Notes: generated from the letters alone by a model not told the origin. A stretch of 64,000 nt of DNA from Epiperipatus broadwayi (GCA_028023455.1 JAQFVV010000003.1:27466001-27530000), one strand, 5' to 3'; positions 10,985 to 36,600 are shown, numbered from the stretch's first letter. Translations and numbers: made by a program.

Positions 10985-11010
10985 ATGGCGGACGGAGACA
11001 GAGAGTTAAG
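10985..11010 (+). CDS. MBD4/MeCP2-like gene, coding exon 1 (MADGDREL, phase 2)
   Basis: aaaaATGGCG start and AG|gtaaaa donor; the phase-2 end joins in frame to the exon at 24818. Linkage across the 13.8-kb intron is inferred. Confidence 0.7.
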
Positions 11011-11999
11011 GTAAAATTATTAATAATAGTTCTTTATTTATAGTGATCACTATAATATTTTTATTCTTCATATTTTAACTCGAAACGATCAGATGTTTTA
11101 TTTTAAGTTTTATTTTGTGATTTTTAAAAAAATGGAATTATTTAAATAAATAATATTTTCAATACGTCATGACTTAAGTATTTGATAAGTTTATGCGATA
11201 ATATTACGGTATTATTGTTTACATTTATTTATTATGAAACTCACAATATATTCACAGCAATTGTATAATGGCAATTAAGACATATATTTAATACAACTGG
11301 TAAAATAAAAGTCGATCCAATACATACAGACGATTATCACCATCTTCAATATTTTGTAGTCAATTAGAAAGTACTGTATCAATTTTTATTGATTGTAAAA
11401 TGAAATTTTTTTTATATTGTGACAGTTTTGATATTCACTGTTACGGTTACTGTCCAAAGTATATAATTTTCTTAACAATTTGTAGAAAAATGCATAAAGT
11501 TTCTAAATACATTTGTTATAAATATTTACAATAAAATTATTATTTTTAATTATCTAAAGAAATATAGTATGTGCAAGCGGAGATTTTAAATCTTATTTTT
11601 CATTCCTTTGAATGCTATGCAGATTATCTTTTTTTAATTTATTCTAAGTATATGCAATAATTATCCTCTTGCATTTCTATTTTTAGAATGGACTGAAAAT
11701 ATTTTAATGAATGAAATTGTAAATTATGACAAACAGTTTTACGTATATAATTATTTGTAATGTGGAAATTAAGAATCAATTATTAATGCTTAAAATAGGA
11801 AATCGTTATATTTTAAATCACATTGTAACGATACCGTTATTAATATAATCATAATGTTCGCAACATTATCCCTCCACTTATTAACTTATAATCATAGGTT
11901 CGGTTTGCAAAATTCGTTGATCTTTATCTTAGACCATCAATGATATTGTATCTCTACTGTATTTATCGTGAAAGGGTCCATACAGTCTGATTAAAATTA

Positions 12000-12560
12000 C
12001 TTATGTTCTTTATGTATTTTAAAATTAATTACTATTTTACGGGTTCACATTTACTTCCATAAATATTAACGAAAAACTTAAAATGTTAGTTCTAGACACC
12101 AAATTGGCAAATCTGGTCTACGTAATAGCTTCATACACATTTTGTATGAGACGAGATGTGAATGTGCCAGTAATATTTTTTTGGTAATATTTAATTGTAT
12201 ATTCAGAAATTTAATAACACTTTTTCTCAGACCCTATCACAGTATATACTAGTAGAATACGTGAATTCTAATGAAGCTGCAATGCAAATACAACCCCGAA
12301 TAATGTCAGCCAACTTTTCAAGTAATTTATTCCTAGAAATTACTTTAAAGCTAATATTTGGTAGGTAAGGAAAATAGATTAGTCCAAGTTCTTCCTAAAT
12401 AGAATGAGATATAATTGCAATTCAATCTATTGGTTATATTCGGATTATGAGACTTGTTTCCTTTTTATTTAGAACATTGGCAGCTAATGTTTTATAATCC
12501 ATGCACTAATTTTTTTCTACCATACACCTTTTGCACCACTATTTAATTTTAAATCATTTC
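12000..12560 (-). mobile_element. Degraded LINE reverse-transcriptase remnant (boundaries approximate)
   Basis: Minus-strand KVISRNKLLEKLADIIRG...EFTYS resembles the RT segment FDSV.R.KLW.KL...GI.G; stops nearby. Confidence 0.35.
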
Positions 12561-12774
12561 ACAATAGGCATAACTTAAATAAACCAATAGAATATCAAGT
12601 CAGTTGTTAAGACAACCTCAGTAGATAAAAATTGGATTCTACTTTTTATCTTGATTTAAGATATTTAAATAGACAATGAGTGAAAGCACCTGACAGAAAA
12701 CGATTGAGATTAAATTTGACCATGTTGTTCTAAATAAATCATATTCGACAAGAAACTAACAAAGGTACATACAC

Positions 12775-12999
12775 ATTAGACCTACTGGCTATGTTTGCAA
12801 CAGTAGAAGGCCGATGTTTCTCCAGGGAGGGGGTTGCAACGGCAGAAAGCCATATTAAAAAGTTAAATTTTTAACAATGTAAAGAGTATAAATTTGTACA
12901 CAAAAATAATAAACACATTATGATAATAAATAAAAACGGGTAGTTGTGCCTTTTTTAATGCAGCATTCTGCCTTTGCAAATCCGGGCAGCAGGTCTAAT
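12775..12999. mobile_element. MITE with ~33-bp imperfect TIRs (ATTAGACCT...AGGTCTAAT)
   Basis: attagacctactggctatgtttgcaacagtagaa versus the reverse complement of ttctgcctttgcaaatccgggcagcaggtctaat; no clear TSD. Confidence 0.6.
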
Positions 13000-13444
13000 A
13001 CCTAAGTACCCAAATAAGCTATTTGAATAATTTTTCCAACTTTAAACAAACTATTACTTAATACTTAAGATATAATAATCCTAAAAAACAATGGTTAATT
13101 GGTTTACAAATATAAATCACATTACAACAGCCAAAGCTTAAATAAACTAACTGAATATCAATAATCTGCTGTCAAGACAATCTTAATGCAAAGGAATCTA
13201 AGATCCTTAAATAGACTATGCAAGACAACTGAAACAGATTGAGACTAAATAATTATTTTTATAAACTTTCAAATAAAGCACTATTCAATACTTTACATTT
13301 GTAAACTAGTTAGCTATTAGCATTTATAGATTAATATATCTAAAGTACTAAATAATAGTTTGAAGGTTTGTGAAAATGTTTATGTATTAATCGTACCGGT
13401 CAAAACATGTTTATCCATCTAACATGAGCAGGAACTCACAAAAT

Positions 13445-13535
13445 GTACTTCAAACCCAGTCAAGCCCGAGATTTAGGTCAGGGACCAGCCTGAATTCGAA
13501 CCCACTCTCTAAGCCCCAGATCAAACACCTAATGA
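13445..13535 (-). mobile_element. tRNA-derived SINE-like head
   Basis: Pol III B-box GGGTTCGAATTC on the minus strand (13492-13503); a related gtttagactctggggct segment lies at about 9538-9560 (+). No full cloverleaf. Confidence 0.4.
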
Positions 13536-13899
13536 ATAACATAATAATGATGGCACATAAGAATTAATTTTAATCCGGCCCACTAGCAAAGCGGAGAAAA
13601 CAATGAGACATCTATTAACTATAACTAAACTAAAATATATATAAGCATGGCTGTACTTTTGGAAGTGGAGAAAAGAGGAATTCAAACTACTCAAATAAAT
13701 TAAACAATAAAAATATAGTTTAATATAATGACAAATTATTATACATTATGACTTAATGGTATACATTAGTATGTGCATGAAGGAGCAAGCTGTAGATGAT
13801 TACATAGTGTCATTTAGGTTATTATTTCTCATATGCTCTTTTTAGCTAAATAATATATACTATACATAAACACACAACTTTGGCGGGTCCAATATTAAA

Positions 13900-13985
13900 A
13901 TGCCAATCGATTATTAGAAAGAATTACATAATATTGCTATTAACGCTTTGGATTACGGTTCTGAAACGTGGTGACACATTATTTA
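13900..13985 (+). mobile_element. Small RTE/LINE RT C-terminal remnant
   Basis: Translation ALDYGSETW resembles the RTE-type LLYGSETW motif. Confidence 0.3.
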
Positions 13986-16900
13986 GGGGAGCGTTCCGAG
14001 ATTCATTATGTATATAAGAAAACTATTTTCACGCCATTACAGTCATGAAAATAAGTAAAACACATTTGAAAATTACATTTGATTATATGACAAAATAATG
14101 AAAATTCTTTTAATTAGCGCTGGTAAGAAAAACGCTTTATTTCCCCCAAGGCAGATACTCTTAAATACAGAAATAAGTTACGACAGTGGGATTGTATAAG
14201 ATTGAAATAAATTTAATTAATAAAACTAGTAGTAGTTGGCATTTATATATATTTCAAGCAGAGCGCAATTTTAATATTAGAGCATTAAAATTGGGTCATG
14301 AGGCAAAAGAAATAATAATACGAAGAAGTTTGCGGTGCTGACATAATAACCAAGAAATAACAGGAAAAGTCATGCTTCTGGATAAAAGACGAAGTGGATA
14401 GGCATGCCATGGACATCAGCCGACGTGCAGGCCCTTTTTTAATTAAGAAAGTGGATAGCCATAGTATGTGCCAGACTTAGGAAATCACTGAGTGGCCTTT
14501 TTATACGAAATAAGGGGTTTTGGGAAGGTTAACTATCCTCAGAACAAGGCTTGAGAAATAAATCTATGGGTTCGAACTTGTCGCAACCCCCAGATTAGAA
14601 GACTAGAAGCACATAATATATATAAACACGAAGATAAGGCCAAATGTCAGTAACGCAGTAATGATAAATGTGACTAATGACATTGAATAAGTTTACTGCT
14701 TTAAAATGAATGCACCTTATTTGAATGCCATAATTTAGACAAATAATACATTATGCAGTTATAATATATATTGACACAAGATTTTACTTAACAACTAAAA
14801 TAGTAAAATATTAAAATTTCTCTAATACGTTAAGATTTTATTTAGTAAAAGAAACATTAAGATTTACCCCCTTCCCTTTTCTACTATTTAAAATAATTCA
14901 ATCCCACCTTCGTGGATTTTAAAACAACTGAGAATATTTAAGCTTATGATATTTTAAGAGTATGGAAAAATAAAAGAAAGCTAGCAGTTATAGCAAACAA
15001 CTAATATGTCACCTTTTTCAGAATTTAACAAAAAATATTTTAAAAGATTTCAAGCGTTAATTAGCTTAAATGGTGGATTTACCCCGGGTAGAATTATTTT
15101 ATTCTGTTCGGAGTTGAACAAATAATTTTATAATAAACCAACATAAAATGTTGATTCGTAAAAACAAACTGGCGAACTTATATAATTTATTTTGAAGGAA
15201 TGTTAAAACCTTAATTAATGGAGATTTAATTGAAAGACAAAGTGGATTTTAGAAATTACGTTCTCCAGGTTGCTGGAAATTGGCATATTAATAATAAGCA
15301 AGCAGATATATAAATCAAATACTAAATACATATAAATAAAGGACCGCACCAAAGTTAAGGAAAGTTAAGAGCATATGAGATAAAATTAAATATATAGAAA
15401 TTATTTAAGAGCAAATACATATTAGAAAAGTTACAAAATTAAATTATACATTAGGAGAAATTGATAGTAGAGTTTTAGACTAGTTAGGCAAGCTAGATTT
15501 AGTTTCAATGGTGGCGGTTTGAAATAATTTATCTTGCACTATTTTAAGAGTTCATATTAAAAAGTCCAGCTCGTGCATGGCAGTTCTTATGTGACAGCAA
15601 GCTTCTATTTAGCATTCCAAAGTTCTCCAGGTCTTTACTTTATTCTAGGGAGCATGATATAACAGCAGCGGCAGATGATGACCCAACAGGGCCGAGAAGG
15701 GTGGTGGACTTACTACTACATCATTTTAAGTTTCATATCGACGTGTAGTATGTTAACAATACAGTTCTCTTAATAGTAGCTAATCTATCTGATTTAAAAT
15801 CCGGCCATTTTATACCCTGCTCAGGTATCTCTGGAATGCTTTTAATTACTTAGTTCATTGTTTTTGAAAGATGCAACTGTTAGATAACGTCCAAAATAAA
15901 TTCAAATCTATTTTCAGATTAGAAATAGATTTGACAAAAATGTTTATAACAAAAGAAAATCTTAATCTTAATCCCCATTTTAAGTAAAATTTTAATTAAA
16001 AATACCTTCCCCAGATTAAAACAATAGTGTGTCCAACCCTTTAATTATTTTTAGACAATTAACAGTTGCATCGTTCCATCTTGGATTTTATAAAGTATAC
16101 ATTTTAATAAAAAAAGTACTTTAAAAAGAAAAAGTTTAAAAATGACGTATAATAAAATATTTACAAAAAAATCAATTATTTGTTAGTATTTTGCTTCTAT
16201 ATATATATTTGAGTCGCACCTATATACTTTAATAATAAAAGAACTAATAATTAATAATAATTTTAAAAATGTTATTGAAACGTTAAAATTTTATAACTTA
16301 GGCGCGCATCTCAAATATATACACAATATATATATATATACGACAAAAGGAGCGGGATGGGATATAGGGTTTAAATATAGGTTAGTAGGTGGAAACATGA
16401 AGCTCAATTTTAAGCTAAGATTGACTGCTTCATAATCTACACCAAACATTTTATTTTTGCCTGTTAAATGAGGTTTACCTAATCACTCTTGGGCACATTT
16501 AATCTTAATCTGTTTCAATTATTTGCTTTCATTTATCTCCTATTTAAAAATGAAATTATCTTATCATAAATTACCTTAACAAAAGATCATTGATATTCTA
16601 TTGATTTATTTTAAGGTTTGGCTGTTGTGAAATGGCTTAGATTTGGAAACCAATAAGCTATTGGCATTTCTAGTTTATGTCTAAATTATTATTTGTTAAA
16701 AGTTTGTAAAAATGTTTATGAGGGAGTAAATTTTGCTCATCATTTAAGATGGTTAATAGTCAGAAACTGGTATAGTGATATGGATATAGTATTGTCATGT
16801 ACATGTAATAATTTATTACTGATGTTGTTATAATGCCACTATGAAGTTTCATTTGATTGCTAATGCATTTAATAGATGGTTCTGGAATAAATAGAACATT

Positions 16901-18997
16901 TTATAAACTTCTCTCTCCATTTTAATTCTCCTCAAAATAATTACTTTTTTCATATACAAAGTCTGTGTTTAACTATTAAAAAATTATTATTTAGTCACAA
17001 ATCATATTAACAATAAATGCTACTCAGTTTAGTGCTTACAACTACAAAGCAATTGTTTTCATTATTTATAGCCAGCCTATTAACATTTGACTATTAGTCT
17101 AGTTTATTTTTTTGGATATTCTTCGATTAGAAGTAACTGATTCTAATTTAGTAACCAATATTAGATATGGACTATCTATCTTGAGTTGCTAGAATAAATT
17201 ATAATAAAAAATTAAGCAATTACAAATCAGTGTCAATGGTGAACAAATTTGATCATTTAGTCATAGTACTTTTTACTTAATTAACTCAATGTGCCTTCAG
17301 TCAGAAAATTTAACATATATACATTGACATGCTTTATTGTTTTTGATTTCTTGGTTTAAATTAATAATTGTCTAATTTATATTTTGTTTTGCTTTTTTGC
17401 CATTGTTCTGGAATTAGAGATATTAATCATATCTAGTTAATAAAAGCTAAAGAAATTTGGTGTATTGGTTTTTAGCACCCTACCCCTCAATCTGATGTTA
17501 GCAACTGAGAACATTAAAATAATTGATAATTGGAGTTGTTACTGTCATGTGCTAATTGATTTGGATTCAAAATCTTTAGAGCATTAAAAGTTCTAAGAAG
17601 TTGCTATAATATTGATGAATTAAAATCAGCAACATATATCTAAAAACTGGTTATAAAGGTCTGGACTTATTATTACCTAATGTCTTTTTTAAACCAGTAT
17701 TTACATTTTGACCTTAAAATTGAGAGATAGATATTATTATTATGAATTTACTCAAAGCTAAAATAATAATAAAGTTAGTTAGTCATGAATCAGATATTTT
17801 CAATTTTGTTTAAACTAAGAGCTTAAGTTGGGGCTTTTTTTTTTTAATCAATAGATTATTTAAACTAATAAATGGCAGTTGTTTTAAAATGTTTATATAT
17901 ATAAAAAGGGACTTCATGATTAATAATTATTTATATTAAGAAATAAATTTGCAAGAAATTTGTCCTCAAAATATTTAATGACAATAAAATTTATTGTAGT
18001 TTTAACAGGAGATTGAAAAAAAATTTTTTAGTGGTGAATATCCCCCCCCCCCAAAAAAAAAACAATCTTCTAATTATGATTTAATATATAGATGATATGT
18101 GGATTTAATAATGGTACATTCTGTTCATTTATGTGGACAAAAAGAATGTATTGATATAATAACCTTAATAATTTAAATGCATAAAAAAAACCTCTTAATT
18201 ATATAATGCACCCATAACCTAAAACCCCAAACTTTCATTTTTGGATAGTGCATTAATATAATAATATGTAATTTTTATGTTTTGATTACTTTAATAATTA
18301 TTTTAAATGATCATTTAATTAATGGCTAATGTTGCATCCTGAATGAATAAAAGTTTTTCTTTCTATTTCCAACAAATGTTGGGGAAAAATAATATTTCAT
18401 TCTGATCATTTAAGATGGAACTACTATACTGTAATAACCATGAAAATTAAATCAGCCATGGCCAGTGTTAATGTGATCTTTACACTAAAACTCGAGGACT
18501 TAGCATCCCATCTTTGGTGAAAGTTTCTTCGTTATCACAATCTTGTTTAGCATTTATGATCAGTGTATTGATACCATTGACTGATTCAGTTTGAAATGTA
18601 TTTTGCTCTTCATGTAAGTGTACTTAGGGATTCTTATTTATTGGCCAATAATGGATTGGTAGCAAGTTTGACCAAGACAAATTAATTATTTAAAGCTGTA
18701 TCATGAGGCCTTTAAACAGATCTAAAATTGTGCTTGGATACAGATTGCAAAAGATATACTATATTTAATTATATTCAGGAATGCATTTTTTAATGATCAT
18801 TGAATCATCATAAAATATTTTCTTCTTATAATTGCTTTTCTAATAAGCTATGTAGTAGGATCTTGAAGATAAGATAGTTCTGTCATGAATAGATTGTATG
18901 AAACAAAGCTACAAATTGATTCATGTATTAATTACGAAAGAAAGCAGTTCATTTGCATTTTACACATGACACCCATCTTTAAGTCATTACATTAGTC

Positions 18998-20539
18998 CAG
19001 CGTTTCCCAACCTGTGGTACGTGTACCACTGGTGGTACGCGAGTTGCTGGTTGGTGGTACACGAAAAATAATCAATAATGGCGGACATAAAAAATAAAAA
19101 AAATTAAATCATAAAAATATCATAGAAACGTTTTTTCCTATAATTCATAAAAATTATTTTAATGAATAATATTATACAGTAAAGTTGTTAATATGTACAG
19201 TCGATGATCGAAAATCCAGCAATTGATATCGTTTTTTTTTTTTTTTTTTTTTGGAGAGCACTTTTAAATTTAGCCGTTAGCCACCAGTAACTTGAGATGT
19301 CGCCGCCACTGTTGTGATAGTGCTGCACTCTCATTCACTTCACAGCATGGCTTACAAGTGACAGGTTATTGTTTGTGATTGTATCGTCTTTGTTTATTAA
19401 AATTCATTGATTCCTATATAACCTGCTTATTCGAACTTATACAAGTAGCACAGGTTTTTTTTTAAAGACAATCCTTTTGATCTCTCTTCGAAATTGTATG
19501 ATTTTGATTGGCTTCAGGTGCTTGCATATTTATCTGATATTTTTTGCAAATAAATGAACTTAAATTTTACACTTCAGAATAACTCGATAACGATCTTTAA
19601 TGTTAATGATAAAATTGAAAATATGATTAAGAAATTAGATTTTTGGAAACTGTGTATTGAAAACAATCAACTGGAAAAATTCGAAACTCTACATATTTTT
19701 TTGTTTGAAAATAAGGTTAGTCTGTCTCAAGATATACAGAAAATATAATAGCACATTTAACAGGATTAAAATTGTCTTTCATGGAATATTTTCCAAAACC
19801 CGAAAACACAAATGATAAGTGGATTTCAAACCCCTTCTATGAAGAAAAGTTAGAAAAAGCTACATCATTATCAATAAAAGAGAAAGAAAATTTAATAGAA
19901 TTATCGACACAATCTAATTAATTTTGGTTAAACATTAAAGAATATGAACAGTTTTCTGAGAAAGCTCTTAAATTATTATTACCATTTACTAGTATGGAAT
20001 TAGTAGAAAGAGCTTTTTCTTCATATATTTTTTTTTTAAAAAAAAGGTATTGAAACAGATTGAATGCAGCTGTAGACTTAAGGATATCTTGTGAACCAAA
20101 TTTCAAAAAATTATGTTCTTCGAAACAAGCACAAGGATCTCATTAAATTTATTTTATAAAAACATTTGATTATGATAAAAAAATATATTAATTGGGTTTT
20201 TATAATTTTGTGTTTTTATTAAAACCATTTATTAGTAAATGAAATATGACAAAATAGTAGATAAAGATGATACTTTGAACAAACACATACATATATGTTA
20301 CAGTGAGTTTATAATTTCAGTGAGTTTATAATCCAGCATGACGTTCAGGCATGTTACAATGTAATTTGTCTCATTATGTGATGTGAATACATGGTCACCC
20401 TATAATATGTATAATGCAAATAAAATAACACACTCGCAATAACAAATTTCACAAAATACAATCATTTTTACGAAGTGGTACAATTTAGCATGATATACTA
20501 CCAAGTGGTATGTGAACCAAAAAAGGTTGGGAAACGCTG
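18998..20539 (+). mobile_element. hAT (Buster/Charlie-type) internally deleted DNA transposon
   Basis: Perfect TIR CAGCGTTTCCCAACCT; perfect 8-bp TSD CATTAGTC (18990-18997 and 20540-20547); transposase C-terminal remnants (LNFTLQ...KKLDFWK; LLLPFTSMELVERAFS). Confidence 0.92.
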
Positions 20540-23500: not shown

Positions 23501-24817
23501 TAGTAAATAAAAATATGTATATAAGTATTTATATAAAGTAATCTATAAGAAATTAATTGACAACAGTAGTTATATATAAGAGCCATGGTTTGATTATTAA
23601 TATCAATTCTGATTATTCTTAAACAAACTTAAGATTAGATTCATCTTCATTAAATCGATGACTCATTTTGTTGGTTCAAAGATGATCTAGTTACAGATGA
23701 ATGTATTCATCTGTTAGTATGAATATATATGAATCATCAGCAGAGATACCATTCAGTTCCTAATATATTTTTTTTAATAATTAAAAGGTTAGTAATTGAA
23801 TAATAATAATTTGTTAGATATATAAAAAAATGATTATAAATATTTTACTGGAAATGAGATATTTTATATTAGCTAAGGACTGCAAAATTTTTAGATCCAA
23901 TTCAAAAAGAAAGAACTGTATGCTGGGAGCTTATTTCTAGAAAGCATTATTCAAGTTGAAATGGGCTTGAATTTTTTATATTAAGAAATTAAGAGCAACA
24001 TTCAAATGTTTGGAAGACTATAATGTATGAATAAAAATAATTTAAAATTATATTTAACTGGAATATATGGAGAAGAGTACAAGCACATTTGGGCTAGAAA
24101 GGTTTAAATAGTAAACCAAGTTAATAGATAAATAATTTATTTTTTAGAGAGTGTGTGTGTGGATATATAACATAGTGTAATTATAAAATTTGAGAAAAGA
24201 TTATAGAAATCTTGCTTAGAGTAAAATAAGTAAAATTATGGAAAATGAATGGAAACAAGAAAATAGTTTGAAATTAAAGAAGGGTATACATTAAATACAA
24301 TGTGTGATTTATAGACAGAAACTTTAGATATCAAGGAAAGATGGTTAAAAATGAAATACAAATTTGAATGGTAGTTGTAAATGTGGTTTATGTGATATGA
24401 GAGAGCAGTAGACATTTTTGGAGTATTAGTTATATGGAGAGTGAGAGAAATGTTAATAAAAATAAAAGAAGCAGAGATTTTTTTATTTAGTTAGTTCTAC
24501 ATGTCAAGAATGAGAATATAAGAATAGGAGATTGGAATTAGTAGAATAACTTTTATTAAAATGAGATAGGAGAAGAAAAATAAGTCAAGGCTGGGAAAAT
24601 TTTTGGTAATAGATAGTTGTAAGAAGTAAAGCAGTTTGGTAATAGGGAATAAGAAATAAATGGGTTTATTGTGACAATGTTTGTTTTTATATGGTGAGTG
24701 TTGAATTTGGTTCACAGTCTTTGGGCATAATGCAATACATAAGATACCCCCATCCCCAATCAGTTTTGGTTATTAATTTCTTATAAATACAATTGCTTTT
24801 TTTTTTTTTTTTTTTAG

Positions 24818-25183
24818 CTCAGAAAAAGAAGTATCTCAAGATCATTCTTCTGAGCCTGAACAAGAAAATGCACCATTGTGTAATTCTGAAAACACATCAC
24901 CTTCCAAAACTAGTGAGGATTCTGGTATTGCTTCATTGCCAAAAAATTCCAGAAAACGACCACATGAACTGCAAAAGGATAAAGTGCAACCAAAAAAGAA
25001 AAAAACTCCCAAATCCTCACAAGAATCAAATCAAGAAACTTTTCAAATTGTTAGTAATGTTGAAGACAAAAATAAAATGTCTCCATTATGGGAAGACAAG
25101 ACATTACCAGAAGGTTGGTATAGAAAGCTAGTGCAACGACAAGCAGGAAAATCGGCAGGGAAATATGATGTGTATATATTCAG
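24818..25183 (+). CDS. MECP2: MBD4/MeCP2-like gene, exon 2: acidic/basic N-terminal region and first half of the MBD ([31 protein letters not shown])
   Basis: Poly-T/AG acceptor, open frame, MBD motif close to MeCP2 [26 protein letters not shown]|gtactg donor in phase 2. Confidence 0.9.
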
Positions 25184-28144
25184 GTACTGAAAGAAATTTG
25201 TATTTGAATATGCAGTTTGTATTTATTAGTATTTAATTGTTGTTATCAGTATTAGCATTGGATGGGTAAAATAAAATTAAATGAGGAACTTTATGTATGT
25301 GAATTTCATATACTAGGAAAAATAAAATTATTCCTATTTTTTTTAGTCTTGATATTACTTTAACAGCTAACTTGGACGCTATCTGATCTTATTGTTTTGC
25401 AAACTTGTGTATCTGTATTTTTATTCCAGCCCCTCCCCCTTTTTAAGTTTATTTTGTTTGTCATTCTCCACCTGAAATGGACATTTGATCTTTATTTATA
25501 AACATTTTATATTATTACTAATGGGTGGTCATATGATGTTCATTTATTTATTTTTAATTAATTTAAATTTGCAGATATTTGATAAATTAAATCCTATAAA
25601 TTATTAGATAATATGAATATTCATATGATTTATTTATTTTTAAAAAACACAAGTCTTTTCCAAAAAATATTAAGAAACAAAATGAAATCAATGTAAAAGC
25701 TGTTAAAAAGGGATGCTTTAAATTTATTTTTATTAAATATATATACATAAACAAGACATTATTTTAGTTTTCCAAAATACTGTTTACTTTTTTTACAAAT
25801 ATATTTACAAATATATTGTACATCTGTTATATTCAGAATATGAGATTTATTATGTGTGTATTATATAGATATTGTGCGCACATCTTTGATTTTTCTTGCC
25901 ATAATTTAATTAACTAGATTGAAGTACTTTTAAATGTATTATAAATTGATTATGAATGAGTTCTTACTCTATCCAATATATTTTGAAACAGTGTAAAACA
26001 TCAGTTGTATTCTCTAATATTAAAGCATATATTGATTTATGGTTGAAAAAAAATGAAAAAAAGACTAATTCTATCATCTTTCTTACCTGGTATTCAAAAA
26101 GATTTATTTTCATTAGAATTCTTATAAGACTTTTTAAATAAATTTTTAATAAAATTATCCATTATTGATTATTATAGCTGACTTCTGAAATCCTAAGAGT
26201 GTTTAAGTTTGGCAAACCCGAGATATTTTAACTAGGTGTAATTTTTTTTTTTTTAATCTATTGTTCTTCTTATATTATGCTGAGTTTTATTTCTCTCTAT
26301 TCATAATTTTTCTAAGTTTTTCAAGCATTATAAATTCATACAGTGCATGTGTATGGGTGATTCTCTAATGACTGTTAAAATAAAACATGGCGCTAAATAA
26401 ATAAATGTGTTATATATAAAGTAGATTCGGTATCTTTTTTTTGTCTTTATTTTATTTGCTTTCTTCTATTTATTTTCTTTCATTTTTTCTTAATGTTATA
26501 TTAATAAAATCTATATTGGGCAGAAACAACATAAGATTGGTATTGACAAGTTATGTCAACAGCAGAATGTCACTTTAATCTACATACACAAAAAAATTAT
26601 TCTGTCAAATATTTAATAAATAAGCATTGGCTATTTACATGATTATCGGGAAGTCTCTATGCATTATCTTTGTGTGTGTGTATGTAGATAATATAATGAT
26701 CATAAAATATTTCCAGAAATGTGTAGAATAGTAAAAAAAGATCAGAATTTTATCAAAAATTAGAAATAAAAATGGATTTTTGATTTATTTTTGACTATTT
26801 TAGGAAATAATAATTTTGATATGTATATAAAAATTATATTAAAATTTTAAATTATAATAATATTTATTACTATATTTCATCATAATTTTTTTTTCTTAAA
26901 GGTTTTTATAAAAAAAAAGCAATTATAATTTTCAACAAAGTAATTTGTCTGTAATATAGTTAACTTTTTTAAGAAAAAGATTTTTTTTTAAATTTTTAGA
27001 ATAATAAAGAAAACTCTTACTTGAAAAATTATTGAATGTAAATCTTGGGTCCAGCATCCATATGAGTATGATATCTTCTCCAGCACATAAAGTTGCTTCA
27101 TATTACAATCATACATTTTGTTTTTATAATCAGAGCATCAATTGTCATCTGACAATTTTCATTAACCTGAAATCTTTGCTCTTTTGTTATTATTAATAAA
27201 TAGATATTCATTTTCTGATCCATACTGAAAGATTAAATGGATTTATTCTGGATCATTTATTGGGCCACAACAAATATTTTTGAACTTTGAAAAAATTAGA
27301 TTTGTTTTAATCTCATTTGGAGCAGTTTCCATCTGACTTGGTATTCAACTTATGGATGGGTTATTAAAGAGAATATTACTTTCAATTGTTTTAACAGCTA
27401 GATAAATTTATTATTTTAGAAATTGGTTTCCTTTTTTATTAAAATGATCATATATTAATTAAACAGTGGATAAGAAACTTTAAGAGCAGTTAAACAGAAA
27501 ATGGTGAAATGCCCAACCAAGCCTGTAGATTTTAAAAGTTTCCAAAAAAAAAATTTTTTTTAATGAATATTCTCACTTTAAACTAAGTTGGTAAAAAAAA
27601 TTTTTTTTTATAAATATGTATATGTAAAGATGAATAATTTTTTATTAAATGCTTTTGTATTCATTTGTCTTGTCTGTGTTTCTGTCAGTATGTCCACATT
27701 TTAGAATTAACAATGAAAAAAAATCTGTCCTCATTTAGAACTCCTAATCCTTATAGTTCCCAATAAAATTCCTTAGCAACTGAGTTAATGAATTTGTAGA
27801 ATAAAATTTTGTTAATATTGATTTAACTCTTACTAAATTAAAATATAAAAAAATATATATTCTGACAGAAAGTTGTAGAATAACATTTTGTTAATGTTGA
27901 TTTGCTTAATTAATCAAAAAGCCAATGCATAAATATTTTTATATAGTAGATTATCATATGATATTTAAATTTAGAATTTATTTGTTAAAGAGCATATTAT
28001 TAAATTATAATTTTTAGCAGATTTTTTTTTGTAATTTTAACCATTATATAACTTTAAAAAGTAAAAAAAAATAAGATGGAAAAATTTTTTTTTTTTAAAA
28101 TAATGCTTTTATATAAATAGCTGACTAAAAATGCAAAATAATAA

Positions 28145-28421
28145 AATAATCCCCTCTTGGTTAATTTGCCTTTTTTAGAAAATATCAGAAATCTTAAGAA
28201 TCTAGATTTGTTATAAAACAATTGGAAATTGCAGGAATGTTGTTATTTCATAAAAGCATTTGAGACTCAAATAAATCATAAAAATGAAAAAGACAAAGAC
28301 CTCGAATGGTTTTATGACCCAACATTATTCCTGTAATTTCCAATTGTTTTATAACAATTCTAGATTCTTAAGATCTCGGATATTTTCCAAGAATGGCAAA
28401 TTAACCAAGAGGGGATTACTT
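28145..28421. repeat. Foldback element with ~125-bp inverted arms
   Basis: aataatcccctcttggttaatttgcc... versus ...ggcaaattaaccaagaggggattactt; ~30-bp spacer. Confidence 0.75.
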
Positions 28422-30878
28422 TGTTTTTTTGTACTTTTACTTGGCTATTTACATAAAAGGATTATTAAAAAAAAAATTATTTTTTTTTACAGCTTATTTT
28501 TTTATAAAAAAAAATACCAGTTTTTTCCTCATTATTTTATGTTTGTCTTCCCTTCCCTGTTATTGGGTGATTTCCCTATATTAGTTCATAATTTTTTTTA
28601 ATGAATACACTTTAAACTAAAAATGAATTATTATTACTAAATATATCTTTTGTATATACATATAAAAAAATCATATCAGTTTTTTCTCATTATTTATGTT
28701 TGCCTTGCCTTCCCTCCTTTGTTATTAAGTACTTTCTCTATATTAGTTTATTATAAAGAATATTAACTATATTTCATCTACATAAGTTAATCTTTTTCAG
28801 ATTTAATATTGTAAAATAATTTAAAATTAATTCTGCATTGATAATATACATCATAATGATCTAGGGGGTTTCATTATTTTGTGACATAGCTTTAAATTTG
28901 AAATGTTAAAATAAGTTGTCAACCAATGGCAAAAATCATCATATTGTTGTCCAATTAAAATTACTTAGTTATAATCTCATCTTGTCCCATACAGTCTTCA
29001 GACAAAGAGCATAAATGTATGGAAAAAGAGTTTTGACTATTAGGATTTTCCTTTGAACTATTTTTATTTGTTCAATGTTATTTTTCATGTCATCAATCAT
29101 GTGTATTAATAATTGCAACAGTAAGAATGTGGGCCCATTAAATCACATTACTATCCTTTAGTCACACAGACATAGAAAATCTATTTTTTTTTCTTCTGGA
29201 GTTAGAATAGAAAATATTCATTTATGAATGGCTGTTAATGATTTCAGAATCCATATTAAATTGTTCAATATTAAATCTAAAAAACTCTCATACAAATATA
29301 TCTCACATTTTCTCAATTTAACTTTTTTTTAAAAAAAAATAAAAATGTTTGTAATTCTTCTCTGATTTTTTTTTTCATGTTTAATATATATCTAATATCC
29401 TGTGATGCTTTATTTAACTAAACAGTGTCAATTTTTTGTATTTCTGATGTGTAGTAGGATGTACAGGTTGAATATCATTTTTCCAAAACCTATGAAAAAT
29501 ATGGTCAAAATGTGCTTATTTCATATACTATATTCTTATCAGTAGTACATATTGACTGTCAAGAATGCATGATTCATAAAACCCCAAAATTTATAATTTC
29601 TAAAAGTATATTTTCAAGCAAATGAGAACAAAAAATATGGTGATAGCTTCTCATATCTGTATAATTTTTTTATGTTGATTGCCGCGAAATAATAAAAACT
29701 TTGGCTCAATTTTTATGAAACAGTTTAAATTATCGGAGTGCTGTATAAATAATATATATTAACCTGCATCTGTATGAATCATTTAAAAGCAAAAAAAGTT
29801 GTAATTCTAAAAAATATGGTGTTAACTTTTAATATTTGGGCTCTTATATATATTAAACATCACAATATAGCAAAGCATGTGCTTGGAGAATGCAGTTCTT
29901 CTTTTATGGAAAAGTTGCATTATTAAAAAATCATGTCAGTTTATCTTTACACAGAGGCAGTTTATCTTTATTGAGTTTCAATTTTGTACAAAATATAAAA
30001 AAACAAAGTTCTATGTCAAATGTTTAGCCTCAAAACAGAAAAAAAAAAAATAAATAACAAGAATTGTTCAATACTCAGTCCCTTTTACATCAGATCACAA
30101 TTTGTGAAATAACATACAAAAATGAGTATCTTTTATGATTGAATATACTATATAAAAAAATTATAATGAAGTAAATATAAGTAATGCATTTCAATATATT
30201 TAGTTATTCAATTAATTCTTTTTGAATAATATTCATCAATAAATAAATCTTTTTTTTTTATAGCGCGATGTTTGTAAACTGTAATATTTAACACAGCATT
30301 ACGCTGTTGCACATGCGTTTTGAAGATTTTAACTATAAATGAATGAATACTAACACTCAACCACATGATAAAGTCTTTGGAAATAAATTACATTTAATAA
30401 AGTATACCAATAAATTATAATATTTACATTTATTTATTTTTATTTAATAATCTTTTTTAAGTATTCTTCATTTTTTCCTCTTATAATTATAGGTATGTAT
30501 TTGAGTAATTGTTCAAATTCATAACATTTTCTAATTTTTAAACACCTAGGGTCAAGGCTTTCAGAATAATTATATTCAACCCATTATTATTCTTTCAAAA
30601 GAACTTTTATTTGTGCCTCTTTGCCCATTGTCAATATCATTAGATTACAATAATGTCTAAGTTACACTTATTCTACCTCCCCTTTCCACCTATACATAAT
30701 CCAACTGACAAACAATCATAGTAATTACCATATTTAACATTATCAATATTTAACATGTAATTTTTCTGGGTACAACAATCATCTTTTGATAACCGTGGTC
30801 AAATAATAAGTACAATCTACAGAGACCTATCAAGGCAGCCTGCTTAATAAATTACAACTTGAATTTTGTCATGACCTG

Positions 30879-31025
30879 CAGTGTTTTTACTCTGACTCCT
30901 GAGGGTCCTGATCACACTTCATGTTAGTACAAACATACCTGATTTGTCACAACCCACAGTGTTTTCACTCTGACTTCTGAGGGTCCTGATCACACTTCAT
31001 ATTAGTACAAACATACCTGATTTGT
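30879..31025. repeat. Tandem duplication, ~69-bp unit with 78-bp period
   Basis: Two copies of cagtgtttt.actctgact.ctgagggtcctgatcacacttcat.ttagtacaaacatacctgatttgt. Confidence 0.85.
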
Positions 31026-31310
31026 AAATCTACAAGCAATTATTTACATTTTTGTACAATAAAATTATATAATTCAAATAATTAGAAATATAAATTGGGA
31101 CCCTTCAAGTCTGTAGTGACTACATCCACCCAAACCGAAGACCTGGAGTGCCTCCTAATCTCCTATCCTTTCAGAGGTCAGGAGAATTGACCTTAATCAA
31201 TTGGAGATAGTTAAACGTTTACTCAATGTTTGGTTGGCCTTCCTGCTTCTCAGAAACAGTGTCCTATAAGTTATGAGCCTATCAGGGAATATGGATACAA
31301 GTCTTTTGAG

Positions 31311-31372
31311 TTTGATGTATAATAAATTGTTGTCACAAGGATTTGATGTATAATAAATTGTTGTCACAAGGA
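31311..31372. repeat. Perfect 31-bp tandem duplication
   Basis: tttgatgtataataaattgttgtcacaagga x2. Confidence 0.85.
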
Positions 31373-31379
31373 TGTCCTC

Positions 31380-32650
31380 ATATACATAATAACAGTGATT
31401 ACTTAGAGTATGTTAATCAGTGAGTTCATTAGAGTATTCTATCTAATTGATATAGTCTTGGCCAAGTTAACTCTGGACCAAATTTGATCCACCATCCATT
31501 CCTGACACATCCTCTTGTCGGTCTTTCCAGCTCTTTAATTTTCTTAAGAAAAATTTTATGAAAGGTTTGTTCAGTTCACCATTGAAATATTAAAATGTTC
31601 CGGGCAGCCCAAATGGCAAAGTTCACTTGAGTTGCAAGTCTGATCAACCCAAATTCACCTTTTTTTGATTGCTTTGGTAATATCAGCGTTGGCGATATTT
31701 TTATCTGACGTTTACATTAGGAACTATCTCCAATCTTACGTAATATGTTCATGATCCTCCTCAGCTTTATTGCAGAGAGGGCATATAGGGTCCAAACTAA
31801 TCCCTTTCCTATAATTTAGAAAGGCTCAAGTAGGAAGGACTCCAAGACTGACCTTGAGCAGAAAGTCTACCAGTTTTGATTCTAATTTTAACCTCTTGGT
31901 CAGCCTCGCAAATCCAATTATACCAAGTAAGGGTTTACTTTTTTCTTCAACCTTATCATTATGTGAGAGCCCATAAGTATCCCAATAAGATAATTTCCCC
32001 GCAAACAAGTTGCTGGAAGTCTTGATGTTGTTGATGACTATTGAGATCTTTTGCTTCAACCAAACACCCTCTTTAAGTGGAAGGTATCGATCTGTTGCTC
32101 CACTTTAATGCATGGCAAGGGACACTCAATTTTCTCGTTCTCACACAACAACCTGACCAAGATGTTATGGGTCCGTTGCAGGAGAAAATTCTGTAGGGAA
32201 TGCAGCCCTAAACCATTCAACTTCTTAGGTTGTTAAAGGATCCTCATGCTGATTACTAGTGCCTTCACCCCCCCCAGCACAGCTTCCTATATAGTGTTTC
32301 AATTTGTTTAATAAACACCCTTGTTGGGGAAAAGCCTGCCAAAAAGTATGTTATCTTTGGCAGCACCACTGCATTTAGTAGCGCGATCTTTCCCAACAAT
32401 TACAGAGGGACCATCCTCAAGAAATTTACAGTTTTTTCGACCTTATCAAACAAGGCCTCTGGAGCTCTTTTCTCATAACATTGGGGGGGGGGGCAGTCAG
32501 AAGCCAAGAAATTTCTGCGGAGGAGCTCTAAATCTCTCCGGGATTTGTTTCCCGGTTCTAATCGACCATAAGGCCGATTTTTCCTCAATGACCTTTAGAC
32601 CAAAGTCACAAGCAACCTGGTCTAATATCTTCTCTAGCATTCTTTAGTTA
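31380..32650 (-). mobile_element. 5'-truncated, disrupted non-LTR retrotransposon 3' part (zf-RVT), antisense in intron 2 of the MBD gene
   Basis: Higher GC; ORF fragments 31826-32059 and 32400-32588; LLKVSLGVLPT followed by the zinc knuckle CPLCNKAEEDHEHI. Confidence 0.7.
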
Positions 32651-32989
32651 TAAATAATTAAGTTAAAATATAATTAAATTAATCTTTTGTGTATAAATGG
32701 CTTCTTGTTGTTTTTTCTTTTTTTAGTGCATTGCATTTAATGCCTTTCTTTTTAAGAAAATGCTCTTTATATATCCCACTCTCCATCTCAAACTTAGACA
32801 TTTCTTCCAACTTTTTTTTAAAAAGGGAGTTATTCATTTTAGAATTTTTCAATAAGCTACCATGAATCTAAGCTTTTCATTTAGTCACAGTATTATTTAA
32901 AATTATTTTTAAAAATTTGCTAGCAATTTAATAAATGTTTCAAATTTATATATATTTAAAATAATTATGTTTACTTTTTTTTTTTTTAG

Positions 32990-33629
32990 TCCAGATGGTA
33001 AAAAATTCCGTTCTAAAGTAGAGTTACAGAGGCATTTTATAAAAGAGAAAATTGATTTAAATGCAGATGATTTTGATTTTACAATAAGAGGAAGAGGAAG
33101 TGAATTAACTAAGTCAAGTGCTAAATCAAGTTCACCTCGTAAACGATCAAAGCCATCCAAAAAGAAAAAACAGGTGAAAGCAATAAAACCATCTGTTCTG
33201 CCAGCATCTAAAAAAGTTCGTAAAAAACTTATTATTAAAATGTCTTTTAATAGCCCCAAAAAAAGATGGGTAAGTAAGGTATCAGAAGAAACAAATGAAA
33301 ATATAATTCCCAAAAAAAAGCCAAGAAAGAAACCAAAAGGAAGTTCGATTGGAAAGAAAAGAAGATCATTTAAAAATAAAAATAAAAATTCTAAAAATAA
33401 AACAGAAATTGCAAATGCTGAACCAGAAGAGATAGGAAACCCACCAGAAAATAATGAAGAAAAAGAAGAGGTTGTTTTAGAAATGGCCTCTGAACCACAA
33501 GAACAAGATTCAAATTTACAGAGTGAAGGCACTGAAGAACCAGCTCCTCCAGAGCAAAGTTCATCAGAAAGTCATTCAGAAAGCAGTCATACATCTAATG
33601 CAAGTGATCCAACTAGAGGTGAGGATTAA
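32990..33629 (+). CDS. MECP2: MBD4/MeCP2-like gene, last coding exon: second half of the MBD (SPDGKKFRSKVELQRHF...DDFDFTIRGRGS), Lys-rich region with KKLIIKMSF, acidic tail, TAA
   Basis: Poly-T/AG acceptor; AG|T completes Ser in frame with exon 2; ORF track 32967-33629; matches MeCP2 PQGKAFRSKVEL...DFDFTVTGRGS. Confidence 0.9.
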
Positions 33630-36600
33630 TTGTTCTCCAAGAATGGAAATTGATGTATAATTACTTTTTTTATATATATATATAGAAAACTTAATTATGA
33701 ATGTTATTTATAAAATTTCATTTTAAAAAAAAAAACTTATTATTTTTAAATATATACATTTAATTCCAAGTAGGATTTAAATGAAAGTGAATGAGAATGT
33801 ATTCTCCATTAGTTGATAATTAGCTTCATTTTATCAAATGTTTTTATTTTTGTAGTCATGCCTATTTATTTATTTTATTTATCAACATTTCTGAAATAAT
33901 TGAATCAAGTTATAGTCTGATTTACATATCATAATTATGAAGGTTGAGATTTTTAAACATTTGTAAAAGTTGGTGTTGATATTCTCATGTCGTGTAAATG
34001 CATATATTTACATGTATGTATTTATACATGTATTTCCTGATCTGCTCTTTTGAATAGTTTGCAAACCATCTTATATTAATTGTGTGTTTATATGTATATG
34101 AACGCTATATATGTCTGTACACAAGAGTGAATTATAAATTAAGATAACATTTAATACTTTGTTTTACAATGAGGTTTCTAGAGGGAGCTTTATATATTTG
34201 CCTTTTTTAAAAAAATTATTCAAAATAACATTATTGAAAATAAATATTTGAATGATTTAGTGGTAAACTGAAATGAAATTTTATGTCTTCAGCCTAATGG
34301 GAATCTGTACCTGGGTTTCTATATTATGTATTTATTTATTTTTACTAAACATAGATATTGGGATATTAGTTAATATAAATTATTAAAAATTAAATTTATA
34401 TAAACACTATCAATAATAGTAATATTAAACATTGCTAAATTAGAATCATTAATTTTTTAAGACTATTGCGTAAGTGCAAAAAATAAACTTTTTACATTAA
34501 ATTCTTATTTTCTATAAAGTAGTCATTGTATCATAGAGGAATAGAATAGTATTGGTATTTTATATATAAGATAATATACATAATATATTCATACACACTA
34601 CTACAGTGCTTGAACAAATATGTCATTGAGTTTTATTTGCATATCAGAATTTTATTTAAATTATATGATTTGTGAAGAAAGTTGGGCAAGGATTTACGTA
34701 ATCAACATAATTGAAACATTCCTCTAAAAGTAGTTTTTTTTTTTTTCAAATTTTGATAAATATATATATTCTAAACATTATCAATAAATAATGAAGACTT
34801 TAAACAAATGAATAATCAGTATTTATTTTTATCATTTAACATTAACTGTGTGTTGTTTTTTTGTTTGTTTAAAGTTATTTCATATATGTGTATACATACA
34901 CATAAAATATATAAATTTTGTAATTTTTATTTATCATAATCATGACCATCTTTAATGAAGTAACATGGTTGTGGTTGTAAGGCTCAATTGTTTAGTATAA
35001 TGTAATTACACTTTAAATGTATATATTGCTTGCTTTTATACCTGAATGATCTAAATTAATGATATTTAAATACTATATGTTATTTTATTTTCTTGTTTAT
35101 TTCTTATCGCTAAATGGCCGTTAAAAATTTTAATGGCCATGAAAAAAATTTCCCTTTACTGATAATTAATTTAACATTTAAAATTATTTATTTTTATGAA
35201 AAATAATTTAATTAAAATGTATACATATGATAGTTGTAGTAATGCATTTCACATATTTTTTGTAATTAAATATTTAAACTTTTTTCAATTCAACATTTTA
35301 AATTGTTAAAAGTATTTGTTTGTGTAGTGTATTGTTTTGTCACATATATGAAATCATACTATTCTATTCACCTTGCTTTCATTAAGTTTAACAAACTAGT
35401 GAGTATGGTAAACTCTAAGAATTAAACAGTGTAAGATCAATTTCCAATTGAGAAATGTGAGATATAAAAATTTGATTTAGATAATTGAATAGAGCTGTTG
35501 TGCTTATCACCTATCTCACTTAAATGCTTCAATATCTTTTGACCTTAGCAGATGATCGTACAACTACTGTTGTTATTAATTTTATTATCCATATGTCTGC
35601 ATTTCAATATTTGCTACAGTCTTAAACTAAGGTACATGGTTTCGTACCCTAAAATATTTATTTACATTTTAATTAAAAGCATATATTACTAGAATGTGAA
35701 CTATTTGAAATAGTTGGATATATATTAAATTATTTTGACATGCAAAGAAATATATAGCATTATAATTTACGTTTTTATGAAAACTACTTAGTATTTGGAA
35801 TAAGCAAAATTATGTAGAAGTCATTCATTACAAAAAAGATGATTAAATAAAATTGTTTGTTACATTAATTCATTTTATAATTAAATTACAACAAAATTAA
35901 TAATCTTTCAGATCTTCTTCCCCCCCCCCTCAATAAATAGATGCTATTTGTAAATTAGTTGATGAAAACAATCCATATAATTATATTTTATTACATACAT
36001 ATCAAAACAATATATTAAATAAAGATTTTATTCATTGGAATATAAATTGTATAACTTGGTATATTTGTATTTGAAATAAAGTAATGAAATTATTTATCAC
36101 TGAATTTATCTATATATGCTTAACAGCTCCTATGAGAAAAATAAATTGTGTAAAAAGTGTGTATTTTTGTTCTTAATATTTAAAACATCTTTACGTGCAT
36201 GTGTGATTCTTGATATTTTTGAACCATATAATACTGAGTTTATGTTCTGTTGTGACAATTAGAAATGTATAATTGCCTTAAAAAAGATCTGGAAAAAAAA
36301 AGCAGTTTATTAATCTTTATGTTTTTACAAAACTAGTTTTTTTTTCTTTTTTTTTTTAATACCTTTTTTTAAAATTATTGTTTCTCTGGTTTAAATTATT
36401 ATGAAAATCCATTTTATTATTCTTCTTATTGTAAGAATCTACAACTGATACTACTCTGTCATGATGTTATTATTCATTTTTTTCAATAATAAAATTCTTG
36501 TGTTAAACAATATTTATAAAATGCATTTGTAATATTATTATTAAATAATTAATATTTAGGGAAAATATTAATAATATATATTTGAATTTAATAATATTTA

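What the first reader, a model, noticed from the sequence alone, without database searches (positions are those of the whole stretch)
10985..33629. Invertebrate-type genome with a glycosylase-less MBD gene built like vertebrate MECP2
Seen: three exons (26 + 366 + 640 nt) give a 343-aa protein. Its MBD keeps the equivalents of MeCP2 R106, R111, D121, Y123, R133 and T158, and is split by a phase-2 intron at YIFS|PDG. It is followed by KKLIIKMSF and IIPKKKPRKKPKGS, then an acidic tail and a stop. Established (recalled): human MECP2-e2 has 26 coding nt in its first coding exon, the next exon is c.27-377, the MBD is split at YLIN|PQG, and it carries KLLVKMPF (219-226) and IPKKRGRKPGS. Invertebrate MBD4/MeCP2 genes typically carry a C-terminal HhH-GPD glycosylase. 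No glycosylase exons were seen by eye in the 30 kb downstream. Inference: this is a MeCP2-like reader without the repair domain, either a short isoform of the ancestral gene or an independent loss, and parts of the MeCP2 transcriptional repression region may predate vertebrates.
Basis: partly seen in the sequence, partly recalled or inferred. Interest (0 to 1): 0.75.

Follow-up and report, generated by a model that had tools for sequence, protein, structure and literature searches.

The report
Ordinary MBD4 gene with giant introns

Summary
Exons of 26, 366 and 640 nt give a 343-codon frame with a MeCP2-like methyl-CpG binding domain (MBD), split by a phase-2 intron. No glycosylase exon lies in the window.

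The headline "glycosylase-less" is most likely an effect of the window's edge. Four exons on the same contig and strand tile the whole MBD4 catalytic domain. They lie 112, 247, 267 and 270 kb past exon 3.

- The first glycosylase exon starts at a phase-1 acceptor and has no start codon.
- One intron of 134 kb sits inside the catalytic domain itself, so giant introns must be spliced here.
- The seven-exon model is 1536 nt (511 aa) spread over 293 kb.
- NCBI's MBD-only models in Saccoglossus and Centruroides are truncated versions of such genes.

No transcript was seen, so the join is inferred.

The MBD intron is also not MECP2-specific: the MBD2/3 paralogue of this genome has it in the same codon and phase.

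One inference survives. The KLLVKMPF-type motif, which is MeCP2's DNMT3A-ADD binding peptide, is conserved in glycosylase-bearing invertebrate proteins but was found in none of 15 vertebrate MBD4 sequences.

The parts
10985..11010 (+). Predicted first coding exon (26 nt, MADGDREL + 2 nt), phase-2 donor AAG|gtaaaa
   Evidence: Read directly. It has a Kozak-like AAAATGG context and lies in the window's highest CpG observed/expected patch, 1.8-2.1 at 10901-11250. It is not verified by homology, and another candidate exists at 12282-12364.
24818..25183 (+). Exon 2 (366 nt): N-terminal region and first half of the MBD
   Evidence: Strong acceptor (18 T + ag) and donor CAG|gtactg. Pfam MBD profile 9-34, E 1e-4. 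Best solved-structure matches are MeCP2 MBD at 46 bits, against 25.5 bits for MBD4.
32990..33618 (+). Exon 3 as an internal exon (629 nt): second half of the MBD, basic linker with KKLIIKMSF, acidic tract. It ends at the phase-1 donor GAG|GTGAGG.
   Evidence: Translation. Pfam MBD profile 38-70. MeCP2 MBD scores 31 bits against 18.5 bits for MBD4. The donor scan shows 33619 as the joint top-scoring donor and the last before the stop, in phase 1. The frame stays open for 209 codons in DNA of 25% GC.
33225..33248 (+). KKLIIKMS-F motif, the counterpart of MeCP2 K219-F226 (KLLVKMPF)
   Evidence: K79, L80, K83 and F86 of the exon-3 peptide are invariant or nearly so across 11 homologues, including vertebrate MeCP2 fragments. 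The motif is present in glycosylase-bearing invertebrate proteins and was found in none of 15 vertebrate MBD4 sequences. K219, K223 and F226 are needed for DNMT3A-ADD binding in MeCP2 (PMC9798253).
33619..33629 (+). Start of intron 3 (GTGAGG...).
   Evidence: The same kind of short read-through tail ends the truncated NCBI models of Saccoglossus (6 residues) and Centruroides.

The downstream exons are outside the window. Extrapolated window coordinate = C3 coordinate minus 27466000.
- G1: C3:27611609-27611791 (L021:1484-1666)
- G2: C3:27746194-27746343 (L003:1490-1639)
- G3: C3:27766168-27766271 (L023:1508-1611)
- G4: C3:27769698-27769775 (L017:9698-9775)
33630..64000 (+). First 30 kb of the ~112-kb intron 3. 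No MBD4-like coding sequence; a hAT transposase remnant lies on the minus strand at 52520-53260.
   Evidence: tblastn with 140 MBD4/MeCP2-group proteins finds nothing here. No Rfam match. Weak hAT dimerisation-domain match.

Best explanation
The three exons are the 5' half of a single, canonical invertebrate Mbd4-group gene, the pro-orthologue of vertebrate MBD4 and MeCP2.

The gene has at least seven coding exons spread over about 293 kb, with introns of about 13.8, 7.8, 112, 134, 19.8 and 3.4 kb. Exon 3 is an internal exon that ends at the donor GAG|GTGAGG (window 33618) and splices to four downstream exons that encode a complete MBD4-type HhH-GPD glycosylase. The predicted protein has 511 aa: a short N-terminus, a MeCP2-like MBD, a basic linker with the K-L-I-I-K-M-S-F motif, an acidic linker, and the glycosylase.

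By homology it would bind methyl-CpG through the MBD and excise T or U opposite G at deaminated 5mC/C sites in a genome with CpG depletion (observed/expected 0.43 in this window).

Shown: the exons, their order, strand, phases, intact frames, single-copy status, and homology of every piece.
Inferred: that they are joined in one mRNA, and the biochemical activity.
For: 1. Glycosylase exons are found. A whole-genome HhH-GPD scan finds an exon on the same contig and strand. Its best solved-structure matches are all MBD4 (E 2e-13).

2. The hits are few and collinear. A whole-genome search with the Ixodes MBD+glycosylase protein P0005 gives only five hits, all on C3 (+) and collinear with the query: exon 2, exon 3, G1, G2, G3. 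The last exon, VQPNDHRLNQYHEWL...stop, was found behind a good acceptor.

3. The catalytic domain is complete. G1-G4 tile chain 4e9e_A at positions 7-44, 49-95, 97-129 and 131-154 without stops, and GIGKYGNDSYRIF is kept.

4. The phases fit. The exon 3 donor at 33618 is phase 1, the G1 acceptor is phase 1 (G+TT = Val), G1 to G2 is phase 1, G2 to G3 is phase 1, and G3 to G4 is phase 0. The total is 1536 nt = 512 codons.

5. G1 cannot start a protein. It has no Met and begins at a polypyrimidine-AG acceptor, so it needs upstream coding exons.

6. Giant introns must be spliced at this locus: the 134-kb intron lies inside the catalytic domain.

7. Full-length Mbd4-group proteins of Lingula, oysters, scallops, Haliotis, Octopus, Lineus, Saccoglossus, Ixodes and vertebrates all align collinearly to these six pieces.

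8. There are two precedents for truncated models.
- Saccoglossus XP_006820975.1 (MBD-only, 694 aa) equals the first 688 aa of XP_077868442.1 (862 aa, MBD+glycosylase) plus 6 read-through residues.
- Centruroides 'methyl-CpG-binding protein 2-like' is 99% identical over 175 aa to an 'MBD4-like' protein that continues into the glycosylase.

9. A convergent EBP/EXPERA gene bounds the 3' end.
Against: - No RNA evidence was available, so the exon 3 to G1 junction is inferred from phase, splice signals and homology only.
- About 167 kb between the window's end and C3:27700000 could not be read, apart from the 3.2 kb of L021. Extra exons or an independent promoter for the glycosylase part there cannot be excluded.
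- Collinearity alone would also survive a recent gene fission.
- Phase compatibility has a 1 in 3 chance expectation.
- Exon 1 is unverified.
Confidence: 0.85

Rival explanations
1. One reading: besides the full-length mRNA, the locus makes a substantial MBD-only isoform. The exon 3 donor is read through, or the transcript is polyadenylated early in the 112-kb intron. The result is the 343-aa MeCP2-like reader with the motif but without the glycosylase.
For: The read-through frame ends after only 3 codons, giving a tidy protein. AATAAA hexamers occur 639 and 882 nt after position 33600. A 112-kb intron offers many chances for premature termination. Several databases hold MBD-only models.
Against: AATAAA occurs 3.5 times per kb throughout this AT-rich window, so it says nothing. 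A stop soon after a donor is expected by chance in 25% GC DNA. The two MBD-only database models that could be checked are truncation artefacts. There is no positive evidence for the isoform.
Confidence: 0.2
2. Gene fission: the ancestral gene has split here into two independent genes. One is an MBD-only reader that ends at 33629. The other is a glycosylase-only gene with its own unseen 5' exon in the unread 110 kb.
For: The two halves are 112 kb apart, and most of that gap could not be read. Collinearity and shared strand would survive a fission.
Against: - The strong phase-1 donor is retained exactly at the end of the open frame.
- G1 begins at an acceptor, without a Met, about where the Saccoglossus models join, a few residues upstream of the conserved SPYF.
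- Nearly all of the 120 listed MBD4-type glycosylase proteins of 377-1200 aa also carry an MBD.
- Both halves are single-copy and intact.
Confidence: 0.07
3. The strong form of the reader's claim: an independent loss of the glycosylase, giving a true invertebrate MeCP2 analogue.
For: No glycosylase exon lies in the 30 kb downstream within the window.
Against: A complete, uninterrupted MBD4 catalytic domain is encoded downstream on the same strand. It is the only MBD4-type glycosylase found in the genome.
Confidence: 0.03

Closest known systems
Invertebrate Mbd4-group proteins (MBD + HhH-GPD glycosylase), e.g. Lingula anatina P0027, Ixodes scapularis EEC12860.1, Saccoglossus kowalevskii XP_077868442.1. 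The 'Mbd4 group' / 'MBD4/MECP2 clade' is described in PMC8330077 and PMC6673714.
   Same: The domain order is the same, and so is the MeCP2-like MBD. The K-L-x-[VI]-K-M-x-F motif lies 45-100 aa after the MBD. The conserved SPYF...KW(T/I)PPKSP(F/Y)NL(I/V)QE entry into the glycosylase is shared. All pieces align collinearly.
   Different: Nothing in kind. The gene is stretched over about 293 kb by introns of 112 and 134 kb, in a 5.6-Gb genome. The linker between motif and glycosylase is short, giving 511 aa in all. The motif has Ser where MeCP2 has Pro225.
Vertebrate MBD4
   Same: The glycosylase exons are 50-86% identical by tblastn to vertebrate MBD4 proteins, and their best solved-structure matches are human and mouse MBD4 catalytic domains. 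The overall architecture is MBD-linker-glycosylase.
   Different: The MBD scores far better against MeCP2 than against MBD4 (46 against 25.5 bits, and 31 against 18.5 bits). None of the 15 vertebrate MBD4 sequences checked carries the KLLVKMxF motif. Mouse has only a degenerate KVTVLKG.
Vertebrate MeCP2
   Same: The MBD sequence, including the R106, R111, D121, Y123, R133 and T158 equivalents, and the GRGS that follows. The KLLVKMPF-type motif, with K219, K223 and F226 equivalents. The phase-2 intron in the MBD.
   Different: This gene has a glycosylase and MeCP2 has none. There is no R-G-R-P AT-hook core. Homology to the NCoR-interaction domain was not tested. The MBD intron is shared with MBD2/3 as well, so it is not a MeCP2 signature.

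Membership tests
Mbd4 group (MBD4/MeCP2 clade of MBD proteins) | An MBD of the MBD4/MeCP2 type rather than the MBD1/2/3, BAZ2 or SETDB type | tested here: met
   Both halves hit Pfam MBD. Solved structures rank MeCP2 first, then MBD4, then MBD3/MBD2, then MBD1, for both halves.
Mbd4 group (MBD4/MeCP2 clade of MBD proteins) | A complete C-terminal MBD4-type HhH-GPD glycosylase domain encoded at the locus | tested here: met
   G1-G4 tile MBD4 chain 4e9e_A at 7-44, 49-95, 97-129 and 131-154, with E values of 1e-16, 3e-13, 1e-16 and 2e-4. There are no stops.
Mbd4 group (MBD4/MeCP2 clade of MBD proteins) | The catalytic loop with the essential Asp (human D560, in GIGKYGNDSYRIF) | tested here: met
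   G3 reads FGIGKYGNDSYRIFC and is identical to mouse and human MBD4 across this stretch. The residue number is from established knowledge.
Mbd4 group (MBD4/MeCP2 clade of MBD proteins) | MBD and glycosylase on one polypeptide | not testable with these tools
   Only indirect support is available. Strand, order and splice phases agree (1/1, 1/1, 1/1, 0/0). G1 has no start codon. The total is 1536 nt in frame. No transcript data could be reached.
Mbd4 group (MBD4/MeCP2 clade of MBD proteins) | T:G / U:G mismatch glycosylase activity at CpG, and methyl-CpG binding | not testable with these tools
   This needs biochemistry.
MeCP2 (vertebrate type) | An MBD protein lacking any glycosylase domain | tested here: not met
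   Glycosylase exons lie downstream on the same strand and are phase-compatible.
MeCP2 (vertebrate type) | AT-hooks with an R-G-R-P core (MeCP2 185-194 and 265-272) | tested here: not met
   The exon 3 peptide contains no GRP core. IIPKKKPRKKPKGS is only a basic patch and is not conserved in homologues.
MeCP2 (vertebrate type) | The TRD peptide 216-226 (SPGKLLVKMPF) that binds DNMT3A-ADD | tested here: met
   KKLIIKMSF keeps the K219, L220, K223 and F226 equivalents. Binding itself was not tested.
MeCP2 (vertebrate type) | The NCoR/SMRT interaction domain (residues about 285-309) | not tested
   The MeCP2 fragments retrieved (P0010, P0015) end or diverge before this region. No reference sequence was available by tool.

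The most novel reading that the evidence does not exclude
The K-L-[LVI]-[VI]-K-[ML]-x-F peptide is known in MeCP2 as the DNMT3A-ADD binding site and contains the Rett residue P225. The novel reading is that it is an ancestral feature of the bilaterian Mbd4-group protein, where it sat on the same polypeptide as the glycosylase.

After the vertebrate duplication, MeCP2 kept the peptide and lost the enzyme, while MBD4 kept the enzyme and lost the peptide. In invertebrates, including this animal, whose genome has a DNMT3-type ADD exon, the peptide would tether a methyl-CpG reader and repair enzyme to the de novo methyltransferase. The locus might in addition make an MBD-plus-peptide isoform without the enzyme.
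Probability: 0.3. Interest if true: 0.55.

Novelty: new member of a known kind. Interest (0 to 1): 0.25.

Why it matters
As a gene it is ordinary: the expected single Mbd4-group orthologue of an invertebrate with a methylated genome.

Three points are of practical use.

1. 'MeCP2-like' or 'MECP2' MBD-only models in invertebrate databases should be treated as probable truncations. Examples are Bugula KAF6031692.1, Centruroides XP_023211625.1 and the old Saccoglossus model. In large genomes the glycosylase exons can lie hundreds of kb away. This matters for any claim that MeCP2 predates vertebrates.

2. The MBD intron (phase 2, in the residue after Y-x-[FYI]) is shared by MBD2/3 and the Mbd4 group, so it cannot be used to argue a specific MECP2 affinity.

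3. The conserved KLLVKMxF peptide gives a concrete, testable link between the ancestral reader/repair protein and DNMT3. It also gives a clean example of subfunctionalisation after the vertebrate duplication.

Tried and rejected
- **Reading the gap.** Only L021 (3.2 kb around G1) is known from that stretch.

- **Exhaustive protein search.** The search with the exon 3 peptide gave only 15 hits at 31-49% identity. No close relative was found, and the organism was not identified. Similarity is spread over lophotrochozoans, with no near match.

- **Earlier notes of this scan** held nothing on MBD genes.

- **Literature.** I looked for a prior description of the motif's conservation and found only the DNMT3A-ADD paper. 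I found no statement on MBD intron positions, so the human exon numbers rest on recall.

- **Rfam** on the window found nothing.

- **Alternative first exons.** One candidate at 12282-12364 has a better donor, but it has no Kozak context and is not in the top CpG patch. It is kept as a caveat.

- **AT-hook homology** of IIPKKKPRKKPKGS was rejected: there is no GRP core and no conservation.

- **The joined protein.** Every search was exon by exon, by reference. For that reason no MBD phylogeny was made.


Full report
**What is in the window**

- Exon 1 is 10985-11010: ATG in AAAATGG, donor AAG|gtaaaa.
- Exon 2 is 24818-25183: an 18-T tract, ag|CT...CAG|gtactg.
- Exon 3 is 32990-33629: ag|TCC...TAA.
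- Together, 26+366+640 nt give 343 codons and a stop.

Translated separately, exons 2 and 3 match consecutive parts of Pfam MBD: profile 9-34 and profile 38-70. Against solved structures, both halves hit MeCP2 best (46 and 31 bits). MBD4 follows at 25.5 and 18.5 bits, then MBD3 and MBD2, then MBD1. The printed alignments show that the counterparts of MeCP2 R106, R111, D121, Y123, R133 and T158 are kept. The human numbering is established knowledge.

The intron splits the Ser codon of YIF-S-PDG after its second base. KKLIIKMSF, IIPKKKPRKKPKGS and an acidic tract follow. No glycosylase-like sequence lies anywhere in the window.

Exon 1 remains a prediction. It lies in the window's highest CpG observed/expected patch, 1.8-2.1 against a window mean of 0.43. 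It has no homology support, and one other candidate exists.

**What lies beyond the window**

The window is G000:C3:27466001-27530000, in a 5.6-Gb assembly.

A whole-genome scan with Pfam HhH-GPD found an exon on the same contig and strand at C3:27746205. Its best solved-structure matches are all MBD4 catalytic domains (E 2e-13).

A whole-genome search with the Ixodes MBD+glycosylase protein P0005 returned only five hits. All are on C3 (+) and in the order of the query: exon 2, exon 3, and three glycosylase exons. I found the last exon by pattern.

Read from the DNA, the glycosylase exons are:

| Exon | C3 coordinates | Length | Phase in / out |
|---|---|---|---|
| G1 | 27611609-27611791 | 183 nt | 1 / 1 |
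| G2 | 27746194-27746343 | 150 nt | 1 / 1 |
| G3 | 27766168-27766271 | 104 nt | 1 / 0 |
| G4 | 27769698-27769775 | 78 nt, ends TAG | 0 / stop |

They tile the human MBD4 catalytic domain (chain 4e9e_A) at 7-44, 49-95, 97-129 and 131-154 without interruption. They keep GIGKYGNDSYRIF, the loop with the catalytic Asp.

A minus-strand EBP/EXPERA gene at C3:27791207-27791620 bounds the locus.

**One gene or two**

Exon 3's frame stays open for 209 codons in DNA of 25% GC. It closes three codons after GAG|GTGAGG at 33618|33619. This is the joint best donor in the exon and the last one before the stop, and it is in phase 1.

G1 begins at a strong polypyrimidine-AG acceptor in phase 1 and contains no Met. 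Its first residues, (V)ATKVIHSPYF..., already belong to the conserved region that precedes the glycosylase in other species. Joining 33618 to G1 makes a Val codon and a 1536-nt, 511-aa frame.

The 134-kb intron between G1 and G2 lies inside the catalytic domain, so giant introns are necessarily spliced at this locus. A 112-kb intron after exon 3 is therefore nothing special.

The parts of the introns I could read are full of transposon remains: a LINE with RT and endonuclease, and hAT fragments.

Full-length Mbd4-group proteins from brachiopod, bivalves, gastropods, cephalopods, nemertean, hemichordate, tick and vertebrates all align collinearly to the six homologous pieces.

Two database precedents show how MBD-only models arise:
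- The old Saccoglossus model XP_006820975.1 (694 aa) is the first 688 aa of the current 862-aa MBD+glycosylase protein plus six read-through residues. The old 215-aa 'MBD4-like' model is its C-terminus.
- Centruroides 'methyl-CpG-binding protein 2-like' is 99% identical over 175 aa to an 'MBD4-like' protein that runs on into the glycosylase.

I put 0.85 on a single gene. What is missing is a transcript, and a read of 167 kb of intron.

**Is it 'built like MECP2'?**

Only in features that are ancestral. This genome's MBD2/3 paralogue on contig C28 has its MBD split in phase 2, inside the homologous Ser codon: DVYYY-S-PNGKKFRS, AG|T. The intron is therefore a family-wide feature.

The 26-nt first exon matches the recalled 26 coding nt of MECP2-e2. 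It is unverified, and the N-termini are not demonstrably homologous. The basic stretch lacks the R-G-R-P AT-hook core and is not conserved.

The other MBD hits in the genome are an MBD2/3 gene and, by eye (not tested), two BAZ2- or SETDB-like domains. There is no second Mbd4-group gene.

**What survives of the interpretation**

The KKLIIKMSF motif is real and old. In an alignment of 11 homologues, K79, L80, K83 and F86 of the exon 3 peptide are invariant or nearly so.

A pattern search found K-L-x-[VI]-K-[ML]-x-F 45-100 aa after the MBD in these sequences:
- glycosylase-bearing proteins of Lingula, Pinctada, Saccostrea, Mytilus, Haliotis, Patella, Octopus and Argonauta, Lineus, Saccoglossus, Ixodes and Centruroides;
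- vertebrate MeCP2;
- none of 15 vertebrate MBD4 sequences.

In MeCP2 this peptide (216-226) is the DNMT3A-ADD binding site, and K219, K223 and F226 are needed for binding (PMC9798253). A DNMT3-type ADD exon exists in this genome.

So part of the MeCP2 TRD does predate vertebrates, but in proteins that carry the glycosylase. This points to partition of functions after the vertebrate duplication. That the Mbd4 group is the pro-orthologue of MBD4 and MeCP2 is already published (PMC8330077; PMC6673714). I found no paper that notes the motif's conservation, within the limits of the library.

**Limits and procedure**

All searches were exon by exon, by reference.
- The organism was not identified. 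Similarity is spread across lophotrochozoans, with no close match.

**Verdict**

This is an ordinary member of a known gene family whose unusual look came from the window's edge. The useful by-product is the ancestry of a MeCP2 peptide.

Noticed in passing
L006:1480-1647 (-) and L007:1255-1599 (-), i.e. G000:C28:10581203 and 10555237: MBD2/3 paralogue. Its MBD is split by an intron of about 26 kb in phase 2, inside the Ser codon of DVYYY-S-PNGKKFRS. This is the same codon position and phase as in the window gene.
   Followed up: yes
window 33270: A consensus donor TGG|GTAAGT (phase 0) lies inside exon 3, directly after ...KKLIIKMSFNSPKKRW. The frame stays open for another 116 codons, so it is probably not the main donor. 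It could serve an alternative splice.
   Followed up: partly
window 52520-53260 (-): Two adjacent ORFs of 119 and 112 aa. The first has a weak hAT C-terminal dimerisation match (E 0.029), so this is probably a decayed hAT transposase.
   Followed up: partly
window 51850-52350: The most GC-rich (40-42%) and CpG-dense patch of the window (12-14 CpG per 300 nt, observed/expected about 1). It lies next to the hAT remnant, and its nature was not determined.
   Followed up: no
window 3249-3748: A 500-base run of N (assembly gap).
   Followed up: no
L015:8827-9843 (-) and L016:174-1088 (-), i.e. C3:27748827-27751088: A LINE-type element (RVT_1, E 3e-20; endonuclease, E 5e-6) on the minus strand inside intron 5 of the MBD4 gene.
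   Followed up: partly
L020:1207-1620 (-), i.e. C3:27791207-27791620: An exon of an EBP/EXPERA-family gene (E 2e-20), convergent with the MBD4 gene and about 21 kb past its stop codon.
   Followed up: partly
Database proteins P0017 (KAF6031692.1), P0007 (XP_023211625.1), P0008 (XP_006820975.1): Invertebrate models named 'MECP2', 'methyl-CpG-binding protein 2-like' or otherwise MBD-only. Two of the three were shown here to be truncated Mbd4-group genes. The Bugula model could not be checked.
   Followed up: partly
G000:C11:17479823-17479918 (+): A DNMT3-type ADD domain exon (37 bits, above the Pfam cut-off). The possible partner of the conserved motif therefore exists in this genome.
   Followed up: no
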